The notes: generated by a model from the letters alone, not told the origin. Counted from the first letter of the stretch, positions 33,501-39,500 are shown. The stretch: 64,000 nucleotides of DNA from Saccostrea echinata (GCF_033153115.1 NW_026889751.1:27652001-27716000); one strand, 5' to 3'. Numbers and translations are program-made.

Positions 33501-36500
33501 ATGTATCACAGTGCATCTGTACCACAGCAGTTTTACACAGGTCACATTGCATCTCGTCCTGTGCACTTGTACGGGAGTCCATGATCAATTTAGTCCTAGT
33601 ATAGAAAAAAAGATGGGAATTTGTTAAATCATCTATATCTATATGTATAATTTTAAAAAGTTGTATATTCAAATGACTAAGATCTATTTGTACTAGCCAA
33701 GTCATTAGAAAGGACGTTAATGGAAACAAAAAAAATTACCAAATTTTAAGCACATACACGTACAAATAAATTACAAAGTTCAACTGGTAAAAACGTGACC
33801 CTGTTTTCTTTCAATCATACTATTATGATACGTCATCTCCATAACTACTTCACACTTCTTCAGCCACCTGCATATGGTGTTCACATCTCCCAGTTTATCT
33901 GATACTCAAGAGCACAATCAATTTTCAAACTGAGGCTTGTTACTGACAAATAAGTTGATGTTACAGGGATATTAAAGTCCTCTTTTAAAGTCAATATTTC
34001 TTAAAATCTGTGGTCAACAATGACCATGATGACCTTGTTAACAAATATAATCTATCACTGGGTTGTATTTTGGCTAACATGTTTCATACCAATTGTTAGC
34101 CTTTGTTTTTATACTGAATTTGATTACGGAATGTTCCATCTACCTGATCAATACATAGGGCTCACGGTGGGTGTGACCTGTCAACAGGGGATACTTACTC
34201 CTCCTAGATAACTGATCCCACCTCTGGAATTTCCAGGAGTCTGTTTTTTAATGCCCTCTTTACAAATTTGTTTATAGATTTTGTTGAGATTGATCAGTTT
34301 GTTATCTTCACCTATTTCATTAATTAGATATTATCTATTTCATTAATTAAATGTTGTTATCTTCACCTATTTCATTAATTAGATATTACCTATTTCATTA
34401 ATTAAATATTGTTATCTTAACCTATTTCATTAATTAGATATTAGGCCTAGTAAAAAAAAAAATTCACTTTTCATAGCAACCCTAAGTTGAAGTGCTGACC
34501 CTTTTTTTCAATGAAGATCTAAATTTTTCTAAAGAATAAAAAATTTGATTGTAAATTTTAATAGCTTACAGAAATGATTTAAAGCAATATTTCTTATGTC
34601 ATTTGTCTAAATTAATTTAGATGTTTTATTTAAAGAAGTCCAGGACAAAATATTTTTAAAAAAATTTATAAAAGTCCACCTACCAACCCATTGGCAAATT
34701 ATTTTCTTTTTGTTGGTCTAAATCTAGTTTATAGTAATGCTCTAAAGGTGAAATTGCAAGTAATAAGCAAAATTTATCTGTATATATCAAAAGAAATCGG
34801 CCCATAATTATTACCTCCTTTAATGGTATCTGTCTGGTCTCTTTAATCCAGCCTGCTTCTGTGTACAGGGATCAGATGACAAACTTATTGTCAAGTATTA
34901 TACTACTGTAATCATATTCCCTTCTTTTTGATATTTAATGTATTTAAACTTCCTGGTGTGTGTGTAAAGATCTGGGAAAGATGATTGGCTTCTACATCAC
35001 TTTAAAACAGATTATTGATAAGGCATGCAAATATCTGTTGACAGTGTGGCACAGATGAGATTATGTGATATATCATGAGAGTTTCTGTCCAAATGAAAAA
35101 AAAGTGAAGATAAAGAACAGTGGTTGATTTCAAAAAACCTACAAACAATACAATCTATGAACAGAGCACAAAAAATTGACCCTTAGAAATTCCAGAAGTG
35201 GGATCAGGTGCCTAGGAGGAGTAAGCTTCCCCTGTCAATTGTAGTCAAAAACATTGACTTAAAAATTGGTATGAAATATGTCTGTCAAAATATGACCTAA
35301 TGATCATTGTTTTTGCAAACAAGGTGATGACTTTAAGTAAAGTTGCTGAAATCCTTGTAACATCAACTTATTTGTCAGTAGTCTGCCTCTGTTTAAAAAT
35401 TGATCTTACTCAGAGCATCCTTTTGCATATTGAATAATTTGGAGACATAAACACTATATGCAGGAGATAGAGGAATGTTACTACATAAGCAAGCAAGTAA
35501 GTAATACTAGTCCCCTACCAGCAAGTGTAATCTGGTTCCCCTTAAAAAAGGCCATTATTCCATCAAAAATCATTGAAGCAGAACATAGCAAACCTAATCT
35601 ATAACTTATTAACTAAGGTAGACTCACATAACAAAAATCAGCTCAATATCTGTTGATACCTGCAAAAACCAAGTGAGAATTATGGCTCCCCTTAAAAATA
35701 AAAAAAAAGTCATAATTCCATCAAAAATCATTGAAGCAGATCAAAATTTAAACTTGATCTGTAACTTATCAGGGTACACTCATATGTCAAAAATCAGTTT
35801 AATATCTGCAAGCATTTAGAAATGCTGATAGAGGGACAGACAGACAGACAGATGAGGAGGAAACCTACAGTCCTCTCCGATTTCACCAGTAAGGGAGTAA
35901 TAAAGAAAGGTGATGGTGGAAAAGCTGAAATCATCTCATTTGTCATACAAAATGACACAAATGATTTCCTAGTAAAAATCAATAAGTTGGGAACAGTTCC
36001 GGCAAATAGCATCCTGGTCACAGCAGATGTCTCTTCTCTCTACACATCAATCCCACACCGAGATGGCATACTAGCTAGCAAACAAGCACTCGATACTAGA
36101 GAAAATCCTACTGTATCAACATGGATTATACTCCGTTTTCTACATCTTATCTTACCCAAAACATGCTTCGAATTTAATGGCAATTACTATTTACAAACTC
36201 AAGGAACTAGTATGGGTACAAAATGCGCACCTAACTATGCAATTATATTCATGGACCAATTAGAAAATAAATTCCTCCAAGAGTCAGTTCAGAAACCACT
36301 AATATGGTGGAGATATATAGATGATATATTCTTTATTTGGACACACAGTAGCGAGGATCTACACACCTTCATGTGCCGTCTAAACAATTTCCATCGAACT
36401 ATCAAATTCACCTATGAACAGTCTACAGAAGCGATCCATTTCCTTGATACCACAGTGCAAATAAATCAGCTTGGAGAATTATCAACCAGGCTGTATACCA

Positions 36501-39500
36501 AACCCACGGATGCCCACTTATATCTACACTTCAATTCTAACCACCCGAAGCATATGTTGAAAAGCATCCCATTTAGCCAAGCATTGAGAATTAGACGCAT
36601 ATGCTCATCTGATACAGACTTCGAAGCACATGCAATAAAATTAAAAGAACAGTTTTTAGCAAGGAATTATCCACCATCCATACTAGACCACGCAATAGAG
36701 AAGGCCAGGAAACATAACCGAAATAACTTATTCATTGGAAACCAAAAATCTACAGGCAAACGTGTCATTCCTTTAGTAACAACTTTTAATAACTTGAATC
36801 CAGATTTTCGATCTATAATAAACAAATACAAAACCATACTAGAACAATCACCTGACACATGCGATCTGAAGGACAGAATTATAATAGCATACAAAAGACC
36901 CCCAAACCTAAGAAGCATCTTAGTCCATTCTAACCTTAACCCCACTCCAGAAGGTAAAGGAAGCAGTCCGTGTTATGAGAACTGTAAAATCTGCCCATTT
37001 GTCAGGAAAACCAACAGTATACGTATTACTTCAACTGGAAAAACTTATTCCATCAAACAGAACCTTAACTGCAATAGCACATCAGTCATTTATGTAATCA
37101 CATGTAAAAAATGTTCTATCCAATACATCGGACAAACGAGCAATTCCCTTAGAGAACGCATGTATGGACACTTTGCTGACATCAAAAATGCAAATCAACA
37201 CAAACCCGTGTCCCGCCATTTCACGGCACAATCCACAACGTCACAATCAGATACGTCACAATTACATAGCATACAGGATGTTTCCATAACGCCGCTATTA
37301 AAAATCAATAACAACATTAATCAACGCTTAAGAACAGAAGAGGTCTTTATCCACATCTTTAAAACTTTACATCCACTAGGACTTAACCAGAAATATGGCT
37401 AAAGTTAAATACACCAAGAGGAAAAACCCAGATGACCCAAATAATCCGCAACCAAAAGCCAACATCACCTGCAACAGATGTGAACGGAAATTCAAGGATT
37501 TAAGCAATTTAAAAAGACACTTCAATCTCATCCACAATCCAACGATCACAAGATATTACTGTGAGATATGTAAAAAATCGTACTGCCGTAAAGATGTTGT
37601 AAGGAGACATATTATAAAGGACCATCCACAGACGGAATACAGTGATTCTTTAATATTTACATGTTCAAATCCACGTGAAACAGCAGAGAAACCGAAGAAA
37701 TATGTTCCGCCATTCGAGAGCCGCCCAAAATCAACTAAGACCCCTATCTTCAGAATTAAACCGGCAAACAAATATCAAGCAAGTTCACTATTAAAGTCCG
37801 CATCCAATGAATCTACAAAAACTGTCTGCCAAGATGAATTACCGGAGTCCTTACCTGTAAAGTCCGCATCCAATGAATCTACAAAAACTGTCTGCCAAGA
37901 TGAATTACCGGAGTCCTTACAAAATAGAACAATAACCATCCACGGAATTTATGGACTGTTTAATTAATCATTAAGGATAAATAATGTAATGTAAAGTTTT
38001 GTGACAATTTCACACGATTATGGTTGTCAAATTATTAATGTAAAGATTCTAGTCCGCAAGTTGTTATGACGTCCGCATTTTTTATTTACATAGTAACGTA
38101 GTCCGCAATTTTTACTTCATGTATAATCATTTCATGTATATTTGTTCTGATGACGACCGTCTCTGGTCGAAACCGGTCAACCAAATAAATTTACTGCTGC
38201 ATTCTCACGAAGTGTTGGTGATCTGTTTTATATCTTTTAGTTTATAACTTTAGGTACAGACCCTATTGAATACCTTTCGGTATCCACACGTGAGAATCTT
38301 CCGCAATTTGAACCTTAGGGTGTTGGTCTCCAGTTTTTATTCATTTGTCATACAGTTTAGTTGTCAAATGGTGGTTATTATCTACAAATAAAACATCTAT
38401 TAAAATATGAAACAAATATGACACACTTTGTGATGTCTTTTATTTCGAATTCACTGGGATATATCAAGTTTTAATACCTATGATTGGAAGTAACTATTGT
38501 TAATTGATTAAACATCATCAGTATATATGAATGTTGATTTGAAGGCCACAGCAAGAGTTTTCTTCTCATGTAGAAGTATTTGAATTAATTCTGCTTCATA
38601 GGAATATAAAAAGAGGAAAGCTTATAATAAAAGAGCACAATTGGTCCTCATTGGATTTCCACAGATTGTTGGAATGCAGTTTATTGAATGAGAAAAGATT
38701 TGACATCACACTAAACACTGCATCTCTGCTGAGTGAAGATCAAGTTTCAAGGAAGACTGAAAAGCTGTATTTGTACTTTAAAATACACAAGTTGACCCTA
38801 CTAAAATACATAATTCTGTTTATCAGTTTCTGATTTTGTCATAGGGTGTTGCCATGATTGCTAGAATAGTAATTTCTATGATTTTTTTTTTTCAAAACAC
38901 CACTCCTCATAGTTTTTGTCCAATTTCAATAAGTCTTGGTGCACATGTAGATTATACTAAGATACATAATTCTGTAAACAGATTTTGTTTATGACAAATG
39001 GCATTGCCGTGATTACTAAAAAAATAAAAATATCTGTGTAATTCCTCCTTCTTTATTTTAAATATGATTTCAATAAGACTTGGTACACAAGTAGACTATA
39101 CTTAGATAATTAATTCTTTGTACATATCTTGTTTTTTTATTTCAACAATTGATGTTTCCATGTGCTACTATAAATAGAAATTTCTGTGATAATCTTTCAA
39201 AACATTACTCCTGCTATAGTTTTGGTAGGATTTCAATTAGACTTGGTACACAAATTGACTAGACTAAGATAGAGTTTACTTTTAATTATTAGAAGTACAT
39301 ACCAGTAGAGCTAAAGTTTTGTCAGACACTTCTGGATTCTCTTAAATTCATCTTTCCTTTATATGACCTGGAATTTTTTTAACCATCTTTTCTTCCTTTT
39401 TAAAATCTTTCTTCACCTTTATTTTGTTCTAAGATTGCAGAATTTTGTTTCTAAGAACATCTTTTTTCACCTTTATTTTGTTCTAGTGAGTAAGATTGCA

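What the first reader, a model, noticed from the sequence alone, without database searches (positions are those of the whole stretch)
35950..38340. Penelope-like retroelement carrying a second, C2H2 zinc-finger ORF coupled to the RT-GIY-YIG ORF
Seen: inside one TSD-bounded unit, the RT-EN ORF stop (37402) overlaps by 8 nt the ATG of a 190-aa ORF with two well-formed C2H2 fingers, followed by an AT-rich 3' region with a hammerhead. Known: endonuclease-positive PLEs normally encode one RT-EN ORF. Inference: this may be an undescribed bicistronic PLE lineage with an accessory DNA/RNA-binding protein (target selection, autoregulation, or a captured host gene). The stop/start overlap hints at translational coupling. 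Both ORFs are intact, so the family may be young.
Basis: partly seen in the sequence, partly recalled or inferred. Interest (0 to 1): 0.8.

Follow-up and report, generated by a model that had tools for sequence, protein, structure and literature searches.

The report
Two-gene Penelope retroelement with zinc-finger partner
A jumping gene of the Penelope type in an oyster genome carries, just behind its usual enzyme gene, a second small conserved gene for a two-zinc-finger protein. This second gene turns out to mark a whole branch of such elements in bivalves, a family normally described as one-gene elements.

Summary
Window 35950-38340 is one insertion flanked by a 14-bp target duplication. It holds an RT/GIY-YIG frame, a 190-aa ORF with two C2H2 fingers whose ATG overlaps the RT-EN stop by 8 nt, and a 3' UTR with a minimal hammerhead core.

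One correction: this copy is 5'-truncated. It lacks about 270 codons and the 5' UTR, and its apparent ATG at 35822 lies in flanking DNA. A full-length copy on contig C16 has a 756-aa ORF1.

ORF2 is not a one-off capture:
- It follows ORF1 with the same overlap in a diverged family (65% aa), with a third-codon-position excess of differences (38/31/89) and dN/dS of about 0.1.
- Full-length homologues occur in Saccostrea, Mytilus and Argopecten.
- In 80 related metagenome loci, ORF2 homologues lie directly downstream of RT-EN in eight.
- On the ORF1 tree, all ORF2-bearing elements form one clade, and 40 evaluable ORF2-less loci lie outside it.

The papers I could read describe EN+ PLEs as single-ORF, so I rate this a new variant of a known kind. 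The function of ORF2 is inferred, not shown: nucleic-acid binding, perhaps chromatin-directed. The family's N-terminus, MA[KR]TKxTxRK, matches the histone H3 tail. The scan's notes hold no earlier record of this feature.

The parts
35936..35949 (.). 5' copy of the 14-bp target-site duplication TCATTTGTCATACA
   Evidence: Longest exact repeat between the two junction regions.
35950..38340 (+). 5'-truncated insertion of a Penelope-like element (about 2.4 of about 3.9 kb)
   Evidence: 98-99% identical to copies on C2 and C16 from here to the 3' end. The other copies extend upstream with PLE coding sequence. The canonical 3' end in other copies runs 8 nt further (TGTTTTGT).
35950..37402 (+). ORF1 remnant. 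It corresponds to about residues 273-756 of the 756-aa RT-EN protein: RT motif A (36023-36055), motif B QGTSMG (36200-36217), YIDD (36314-36325), linker CX3CX2C (36971-36994), GIY..CxxC..YIG (37085-37132), and the His part of CCHH plus the catalytic region (37157-37351).
   Evidence: Pfam RVT_1 and GIY-YIG. Motif coordinates. Full-length ORF1 in L044 7509..5239 on the minus strand. The open frame upstream to 35822 is flanking DNA.
37395..37402 (+). 8-nt overlap ATGGCTAA between the ORF2 start and the ORF1 stop
   Evidence: The same overlap is found in the 65%-aa family on C30 (L045 ORF1 ..7188, ORF2 7181..) and in L062.
37395..37967 (+). ORF2, 190 aa. It has an N-terminal basic tail MAKVKYTKRK (37395-37424), C2H2 finger 1 (37470-37535), C2H2 finger 2 (37560-37625), the conserved motifs NPRE..KP..PPFESRP (37668-37727) and IFRIKPANK (37746-37772), and the C-terminal motif TVCQDELP..ITIHGIYGLFN (37887-37964).
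   Evidence: Pfam zf-C2H2. Family alignment A2. AlphaFold pLDDT about 90 over residues 20-120. Best fold match is the Tramtrack two-finger peptide 2DRP, rmsd 1.1 A over 54 columns.
37791..37922 (+). In-frame tandem duplication, 2 x 66 bp (22 aa), inside ORF2
   Evidence: Absent from the C30 family. More copies in C53.
37968..38340 (+). AT-rich 3' UTR of the element
   Evidence: Shared with all 5'-truncated copies.
38142..38185 (+). Minimal type-I hammerhead-like motif: helix I UUGUU/AACCAAA, CUGAUGA, helix II CGACC-GUCUCU-GGUCG, GAAAC, and the palindrome ACCGGU with the predicted cleavage site after GUC.
   Evidence: The core is conserved across subfamilies. The same order RT-EN, ORF2, hammerhead is seen in L078 and L096. 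No Rfam hit.
38341..38354 (.). 3' copy of the target-site duplication

Best explanation
The window holds a young, 5'-truncated copy of a canonical C-terminal-EN Penelope-like retrotransposon. By motifs it is Neptune/Nematis-like. It belongs to a sub-clade whose members carry a second, element-encoded gene directly behind RT-EN.

Shown:
- ORF2 is part of the transposed unit. It lies between ORF1 and the hammerhead-bearing 3' UTR.
- It has been co-inherited with ORF1 through deep divergence, consistent with a single gain.
- It is kept open under purifying selection.
- It encodes a roughly 160-240-aa protein with a disordered basic N-terminal tail, two classical DNA-binding-type C2H2 fingers, and conserved linear motifs up to a conserved C-terminus.

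Inferred:
- ORF2p is made from the element's own transcript. The most likely route is termination-reinitiation, because its ATG lies from 8 nt before to 14 nt after the ORF1 stop in the bivalve-type members.
- It acts as an accessory factor for the element's propagation by binding nucleic acid. It could tether the RNP to DNA or chromatin, or regulate the element's own promoter or silencing.
- Which of these roles applies is not known.
For: Insertion and copies:
- The insertion has a TSD.
- Near-identical copies show varied 5' truncation points, head-to-head pairs and partial tandems, all typical of PLEs.
- The full-length copy has a 756-aa ORF1 followed by ORF2.

Linkage of ORF2 to RT-EN:
- The 8-nt overlap is conserved in the C30 family, where ORF2 is 65% and the ORF1 C-terminus 78% identical at the aa level. 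That ORF2 is intact at 166 aa in both arms. The overlap is also in L062.
- The S. cucullata model P0003 and the Mytilus coruscus model P0282 join RT sequence to ORF2 sequence.
- ORF2-HMM hits lie directly downstream of RT-EN on the same strand in L078, L096, L099, L088, L128, L079, L127 and L142, with exactly two C2H2 fingers each.

Selection on ORF2:
- Differences by codon position are 38/31/89.
- NG86 dN/dS is about 0.10.
- Random substitution at that divergence keeps the frame open in 0.075% of simulations.

Family and phylogeny:
- A profile search of 1.84 billion representatives finds full-length homologues of 160-240 aa.
- Named members come from Argopecten irradians, Mytilus edulis and M. 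coruscus, and Saccostrea.
- On the ORF1 trees, all ORF2+ rows sit in one 18-row clade: FastTree support 95, IQ-TREE SH-aLRT 91, one change against a shuffled mean of 9.4. No evaluable ORF2-less locus is inside it.

Structure: confident two-finger module matching the Tramtrack DNA-binding pair.
Against: - No direct evidence that ORF2 is translated. The contigs spanning the ORF1/ORF2 junction, including one from an RNA-seq library (X6), cannot show a transcript or its ends.
- Reinitiation after a 756-codon ORF is normally inefficient in eukaryotes, and no stimulatory signal was identified.
- In some clade members the spacer is 88-144 nt, or ORF2 seems to contain an intron, so one expression mechanism may not fit all.
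- dS is saturated, so the dN/dS figure is rough.
- ORF2 evolves much faster than ORF1: 42% against 77% identity for L078/L096.
- Among the four young copies here, one has a premature TGA and two lack a finger histidine.
- The element's mobility without ORF2 was not tested.
- Eight clade members could not be scored for ORF2, because only their proteins were available.
Confidence: 0.8

Rival explanations
1. ORF2 is a passenger. A host C2H2 gene fragment was transduced or captured by one PLE lineage, as with the host genes framed by Penelope terminal repeats in Adineta vaga. It has no role for the element and stays open only because the copies are young.
For: PLEs can mobilise host genes between their terminal repeats (PMC3846280). 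The window family is young, at 98-99% identity, and low in copy number. ORF2 evolves fast.
Against: ORF2 persists across ORF1 divergences of 35-78% aa identity, in several bivalve orders and in metagenome contigs. Its position, two-finger core, N-terminus and C-terminus are conserved. It shows a third-position excess of differences and maps to a single clade. A neutral passenger would have decayed: an open frame is expected in 0.075% of simulations.
Confidence: 0.05
2. ORF2 is not a separate protein. It is the C-terminal extension of RT-EN, made by programmed frameshifting or stop-codon readthrough, giving an RT-EN-ZnF fusion analogous to the DNA-binding fingers of R2-type elements.
For: ORF2 abuts ORF1 closely, from -8 to +14 nt. 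In L096 and L099 it is in frame with ORF1, 9 nt from the first base of the stop. Site-specific non-LTR elements carry C2H2 fingers within their single protein (general knowledge).
Against: The frame relation varies between members (+1, +1, 0, 0), and the spacers range from 6 to 144 nt. In the window, only 5 codons are open upstream of the ATG in the ORF2 frame. Homology between family members begins at the initiator Met with a conserved MA[KR]TK N-terminus. No slippery site was identified.
Confidence: 0.07
3. ORF2 is expressed from its own sub-genomic or spliced mRNA, through an internal promoter or a splice acceptor just before the ATG, rather than by coupling to ORF1 termination.
For: PLEs retain introns and have internal promoters (PMC8557442). 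L142 ORF2 appears to contain a GT..AG intron. A pyrimidine-rich ...CCACTAG| lies 14 nt before the window ATG. Reinitiation after long ORFs is inefficient.
Against: The tight stop/start spacing is conserved in the bivalve-type members, which a separate mRNA would not require. No read-level evidence either way.
Confidence: 0.25

Closest known systems
Canonical C-terminal EN+ Penelope-like elements with a linker zinc-finger (Neptune / Nematis clades; Arkhipova 2006; Craig et al. 2021, PMC8557442)
   Same: - ORF1 has the DKG motif, the RT core with YIDD, and a CX3CX2C linker.
- The GIY-YIG domain has CxxC between GIY and YIG, plus downstream His residues (CCHH).
- Copies are 5'-truncated, with partial tandems (pLTR), head-to-head inverted copies, variable TSDs and AT-rich targets.
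- A minimal hammerhead sits in the terminal region.
   Different: These clades are described as single-ORF elements. Here a second conserved ORF with two C2H2 fingers lies between RT-EN and the hammerhead-bearing 3' UTR. Assignment to Neptune or to Nematis was not resolved, because no reference sequences were available.
Bicistronic non-LTR retrotransposons (LINE ORF1p/ORF2p) with stop/start coupling, e.g. SART1 UAAUG (general knowledge; review PMC3894237 listed)
   Same: There are two ORFs on one retroelement RNA. The accessory protein is a small nucleic-acid-binding protein. The close or overlapping stop/start suggests termination-reinitiation.
   Different: The gene order is reversed: the accessory ORF is downstream of RT. 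It has no homology to ORF1p, no coiled coil, and neither the RRM nor the CCHC type of domain. The RT is telomerase-like and the endonuclease is GIY-YIG.
Host genes mobilised between Penelope terminal repeats in Adineta vaga (PMC3846280)
   Same: Non-RT coding sequence is carried within a PLE unit.
   Different: Those are recent, intron-containing host gene copies that replace the PLE ORF. Here the extra ORF coexists with RT-EN, is ancient, defines a clade and is under selection.
Viral histone-tail mimics (influenza NS1 and others; review PMC6028506)
   Same: A short disordered terminal peptide resembles the H3 tail. The family consensus MA[KR]TKxTxRK compares with H3 MARTKQTARK.
   Different: No transposon example turned up in my searches. 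The resemblance here is at the true N-terminus, as in H3 itself. It is untested and is weaker in the window copy (MAKVKYTKRK).

Membership tests
Penelope-like elements, EN+ (canonical C-terminal GIY-YIG) | RT and GIY-YIG endonuclease in one ORF, with EN C-terminal to RT | tested here: met
   Pfam RVT_1 at residues 286-412 and GIY-YIG at 652-691 of the 756-aa ORF1. The same holds in the window remnant.
Penelope-like elements, EN+ (canonical C-terminal GIY-YIG) | PLE-specific motifs: the N-terminal DKG motif, and a CCHH motif with two Cys between GIY and YIG | tested here: met
   IIKPADKGGAIVIM is in the full-length ORF1. VIYVITCKKCSIQYIG followed by GHF...QHKPVSRHF is also present. These residues are invariant in alignment A3. 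The features are as defined in PMC8557442.
Penelope-like elements, EN+ (canonical C-terminal GIY-YIG) | Insertion habits: 5' truncation, partial tandems (pLTR), inverted head-to-head copies, variable TSD | tested here: met
   A tandem 3' end lies directly upstream of the full-length copy in L044. Inverted pairs are on C2, C30, C54 and C57. TSDs are 14 bp and 9 bp.
Penelope-like elements, EN+ (canonical C-terminal GIY-YIG) | Single ORF | tested here: not met
   A second conserved ORF follows RT-EN. This is the point of difference, and I treat it as a variant, not grounds for exclusion.
Neptune / Nematis (versus Penelope/Poseidon) | Extra CX2-5CxxC zinc-finger-like motif in the RT-EN linker, absent in Penelope/Poseidon | tested here: met
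   CYENCKIC lies at 36971-36994. The three Cys are invariant in A3 (C614, C618, C621). The criterion is from PMC8557442.
Neptune / Nematis (versus Penelope/Poseidon) | Placement within the named clade on an RT phylogeny with reference sequences | not testable with these tools
   No Repbase reference sequences were available. Only unnamed relatives were placed on the trees.
Hammerhead ribozyme (minimal PLE type I) | Catalytic core CUGAUGA...GAAA...UH with helices I-III | tested here: inconclusive
   The core, a 5-bp helix II, the palindromic ACCGGU and a short helix I are present and conserved. No Rfam hammerhead model matches at E<=10. Cleavage was not tested.
Classical C2H2 zinc-finger proteins | CX2-4CX12HX3-5H fingers with a beta-beta-alpha fold | tested here: met
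   Pfam zf-C2H2 with two stretches. Cys and His are invariant or nearly so in A2. The model has pLDDT about 90. Best match is 2DRP, TM 0.79 on the target.

The most novel reading that the evidence does not exclude
ORF2p may be a transposon-encoded histone H3 tail mimic joined to a sequence-reading two-finger module. After removal of Met1, the conserved N-terminus A-[KR]-T-K-x-T-x-R-K would present the same residues as H3 A1, R2, T3, K4, T6, R8 and K9. These are the residues that chromatin writers and readers recognise. That could let a Penelope-like element decoy or recruit host silencing or activating machinery at its own copies or at target sites. It would be a counter-defence or targeting device not described for retrotransposons.
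Probability: 0.15. Interest if true: 0.85.

Novelty: new variant of a known kind. Interest (0 to 1): 0.62.

Why it matters
Penelope-like elements are the least understood class of eukaryotic retrotransposons. Both the main survey and the first in-vitro study describe their endonuclease-bearing forms as single-ORF elements.

A clade that has kept a second, fast-evolving but constrained DNA-binding-type protein changes that picture. Some PLEs evidently need, or benefit from, an accessory factor. This gives a handle on target choice, RNP assembly or host-silencing interplay in bivalves, whose genomes are rich in PLEs.

It also matters for annotation. These ORF2s are currently filed in bivalve genomes as host genes ('uncharacterized protein', 'lsy-27-like', 'KRAB').

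The H3-tail-like N-terminus, if functional, would extend histone mimicry from viruses to transposons.

Tried and rejected
- **Shared 5' end.** I first suspected that all long copies share a 5' end at 35943, which would mean a non-autonomous unit. This was rejected. The matches stopped there only because my query's element starts there, and the other copies continue upstream.
- **Rfam.** Two scans for the hammerhead found nothing.
- **ESM Atlas.** It gave only generic C2H2 clusters.
- **Foldseek against PDB.** It returned only generic two-finger matches, none at E<=0.001.
- **dN/dS for L078 against L096.** It failed because dS is saturated.
- **Metagenome scans for ORF2.** The scan with P0128 alone found nothing. 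The ORF1 alignment worked.
- **Weak own-genome ORF2 hits L067-L077.** These are other C2H2 genes or repeats with no RT-EN beside them, apart from the fragment L071.
- **Downstream ORFs of ORF2-less PLE loci.** They have no Pfam domain.
- **Killifish Neptune 'ORF1'** (PMC12602865). It is a different, unannotated ORF, not a C2H2 gene.
- **A read joint at 35947>38403 in run X15.** It does not match the empty site and lies in repeats, so I did not use it.
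Full report
**What is at the coordinates**

Window 35950-38340 is a single insertion. It is bounded by an exact 14-bp direct repeat, TCATTTGTCATACA, at 35936-35949 and 38341-38354.

Inside it, an open frame with RVT_1 and GIY-YIG Pfam matches ends with TAA at 37400-37402. A 190-aa ORF with two C2H2 fingers starts at ATG 37395, so the two overlap by 8 nt (ATGGCTAA).

The 3' UTR is 373 nt. At 38142-38185 it carries UUGUU-CUGAUGA-CGACC-GUCUCU-GGUCG-AAAC-CGG-UC-AACCAAA. 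This has the hammerhead core with a 5-bp helix II and a palindromic ACCGGU, the layout of the 'minimal' PLE hammerheads (Cervera and de la Pena 2014, reference 14 of PMC11167929). The core is conserved in subfamilies that are only 83-89% identical overall. No Rfam hammerhead model matches, even at E<=10.

**Correction to the observation**

The copy is 5'-truncated. The 526-aa ORF listed from ATG 35822 begins in an unrelated, abundant flanking repeat. Copies on C2 and C16 are 98-99% identical from 35943/35950 onward and continue upstream with PLE coding sequence (..GRPIVSAVSGPTEKLS..).

The C16 copy (L044, minus strand) has a 756-aa ORF1 with the DKG motif. It is followed by ORF2, which there carries a premature TGA. 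It is preceded directly by the 3' end of another copy, the partial-tandem 'pLTR' arrangement.

The window copy therefore lacks about 270 codons and the 5' UTR, and its RT cannot be functional. ORF2 itself is intact here.

**Which genome, and how many copies**

The genome is very likely Saccostrea echinata. ORF2 is 98% identical to LOC133204470 of that species, on a contig whose length equals that of C2.

The family is young and low in copy number:
- There are four complete ORF2 copies. One has a TGA, and two (an inverted pair) lack a finger histidine.
- There are about a dozen shorter 5'-truncated copies with different truncation points.
- Head-to-head pairs, partial tandems, TSDs of 9-14 bp and AT-rich targets are all seen.

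These are typical PLE habits (PMC8557442).

**Does ORF2 belong to the element?**

Within this genome, a diverged family on C30 has ORF2 in the same place with the same 8-nt overlap. Its ORF1 C-terminus is 78% identical at the aa level. Its ORF2 is 65% identical over aligned residues and is intact at 166 aa in both arms of an inverted pair. A degenerate third lineage (L062) also shows the ORF1 end overlapping the ORF2 start.

Between the window and C30 ORF2s, nucleotide differences fall 38/31/89 on codon positions 1/2/3. Forty-nine differing codons are synonymous, and the indels are in frame. NG86 dN/dS is about 0.10, with dS saturated. Random substitution at the same divergence leaves the frame open in only 0.075% of simulations.

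**Beyond this genome**

The word-index search found only Saccostrea relatives. A profile search of 1.84 billion cluster representatives found full-length homologues of 160-240 aa. A second word search with the family alignment named hosts: Argopecten irradians (XP_069137275.1), Mytilus edulis and M. coruscus (annotated 'KRAB'), and S. cucullata ('lsy-27-like').

The family alignment (A2; further sequences) shows a conserved plan:
- an N-terminus MA[KR]TKxTx[RK]K
- two C2H2 fingers
- the motif PRExAxKPxxWxPPxEA
- the motif FRIxPA
- in most members an acidic LEEDLYLSDSE stretch
- a C-terminal TxCxDELPxxLWxRxxxIxSVYGxF

Gene models P0003 (S. cucullata) and P0282 (M. coruscus) join RT sequence to ORF2 sequence, which indicates physical linkage in those genomes too. 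P0166 (ORF2-like) and P0005 (RT-EN, 53% identical to ORF1) both report a longest Logan contig of 3873 nt. This suggests one bicistronic contig, but it is an inference only.

**Independent DNA test**

A metagenome scan with an ORF1 alignment returned 80 PLE loci. An ORF2 HMM hits an ORF directly downstream of RT-EN, on the same strand, in eight of them: L078, L096, L099, L088, L128, L079, L127 and L142. A ninth locus, L124, gives a weak hit. Pfam finds exactly two C2H2 fingers in these ORF2s.

The two closest relatives, L078 and L096 (48-50% ORF1 identity), also have a hammerhead core about 200 nt after ORF2, as in the window.

Forty loci with at least 600 nt of downstream sequence have no ORF2.

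**ORF1 trees**

On ORF1 trees of 93 rows, every ORF2-bearing element falls in one 18-row clade. The other eight rows of that clade are proteins whose context I could not see. They include Argopecten, Ylistrum and Ruditapes proteins. No ORF2-less locus lies inside the clade.
- FastTree support is 95.
- IQ-TREE SH-aLRT is 91.
- One change of state is needed, against a shuffled mean of 9.4 (0 of 500 shuffles as low).

L124 lies outside the clade and may be unrelated. The trees used all 80 metagenome loci plus L044 ORF1 and 12 database proteins, and no rows were removed.

The pattern is that of a single ancient gain retained ever since.

**How ORF2 may be expressed (inferred)**

In the bivalve-type members, the ORF2 ATG lies 8 nt before to 14 nt after the ORF1 stop. 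The frame relations differ between members (+1, +1, 0, 0). In other clade members the spacer is 88-144 nt. In L142 the MARTKKT-encoding start seems to be separated from the rest by a GT..AG intron.

The conserved initiator Met and N-terminus argue for a separate protein, not a frameshift fusion. Termination-reinitiation fits the tight spacing but is unproven. A spliced or internally initiated mRNA is a serious rival.

Logan contigs from four runs, one of them an RNA-seq library, span the ORF1/ORF2 junction at 97-99% identity. Contigs cannot show transcription, transcript ends or translation.

**What ORF2p may do (inferred)**

AlphaFold with the 15-sequence alignment gives a confident two-finger module plus an ordered extension (pLDDT about 90 for residues 20-120) and disordered termini. 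The best PDB match is the Tramtrack two-finger DNA-binding peptide, 2DRP, at rmsd 1.1 A.

I therefore favour a nucleic-acid-binding accessory factor. It could act in target or chromatin tethering, in RNP assembly, or in control of the element's own expression. Insertion flanks are AT-rich without an obvious shared motif, so sequence-specific targeting is not evident.

A striking side observation concerns the N-terminus. The family consensus, MA[KR]TKxTx[RK]K, coincides at every conserved position with the histone H3 tail, MARTKQTARKS. Examples are MARTKVTARKN, MAKTKKTARKE and MARTKLTKRKE. The H3 peptide ARTKQTARKSTGGKA is as printed in PMC11624362 and PMC3022755. A rough expectation for such a seven-position match from average residue frequencies is about 1e-8. 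This figure is my own estimate, it is post hoc, and it would be higher for basic tails. Viral histone mimicry is known (PMC6028506). My searches found no transposon example. The window family itself has drifted to MAKVKYTKRK. This reading is untested.

**Comparison with what is known**

ORF1 meets the defining features of canonical EN+ PLEs. With its CX3CX2C linker it is Neptune/Nematis-like rather than Penelope/Poseidon (PMC8557442). The exact clade could not be named without reference sequences.

Both PMC8557442 and PMC11167929 state that canonical EN+ PLEs encode RT and EN in a single ORF. None of the PLE papers I searched mentions a downstream zinc-finger ORF.

**Verdict**

The novelty class is a new variant of a known kind.

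**Tools unavailable**

Noticed in passing
ORF2 family N-termini: window 37395-37424; P0130, P0128, P0283, P0147, P0280; L079 4701-, L142 about 1725-: The conserved N-terminus MA[KR]TKxTx[RK]K matches the histone H3 tail (MARTKQTARKS) at every conserved position. This may be a transposon-encoded H3-tail mimic. It is weaker in the window copy (MAKVKYTKRK).
   Followed up: partly
L142 about 1720-2260: ORF2 of this metagenome PLE seems to be split. A first exon encodes MARTKKTENALKEM..., and a GT..AG intron of about 0.45 kb precedes the rest of the ORF. That would be an intron retained inside a retroelement's accessory gene.
   Followed up: no
window 38071-38340 and loci L013-L030: The last 270 nt or so of the element, including the hammerhead core, is shared at 83-90% identity with dozens of short copies genome-wide. 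It is far deeper than the coding part in RNA-seq run X6 (about 115-142 against about 5). This is consistent with retrozyme-like non-autonomous relatives or many truncated copies.
   Followed up: partly
L006 and L007 (C57:1820553-1824104, C11:1045407-1048967): These are internally deleted derivatives of the same family. About 80 nt of 5' UTR is joined directly to about window position 37785 inside ORF2.
   Followed up: no
window 37791-37922; C53:728237-728812 (L059, L061): An in-frame 66-bp (22-aa) tandem duplication lies inside ORF2. It is present in all copies of this family and expanded further in the C53 copy.
   Followed up: no
window 35326-35950: The element inserted into an abundant repeat of about 400 bp, with more than 50 copies at 72-78% identity in the genome. 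This repeat supplies the spurious upstream ATG of the RT-EN ORF.
   Followed up: no
window 40214-40317: A near-perfect hairpin of about 100 nt (inverted repeat) gives sub-threshold hits to many unrelated miRNA-precursor models on both strands. It is probably a MITE-like palindrome, not a conserved miRNA.
   Followed up: no
L069, L070, L072, L077 (C27, C5, C61, C33): This is another repeated two-finger C2H2 ORF family (..CTAEGCNRFLRTMKDTRSHWNLVH..) with at least four copies and no RT-EN within 1.5 kb. It is unrelated to the PLE ORF2 beyond the fingers.
   Followed up: no
P0198, P0281, P0284, P0002, P0001: Public bivalve annotations file PLE ORF2 copies as host genes: 'KRAB' in Mytilus, 'zinc finger protein lsy-27-like' in S. 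cucullata, and 'uncharacterized protein' in S. echinata.
   Followed up: partly
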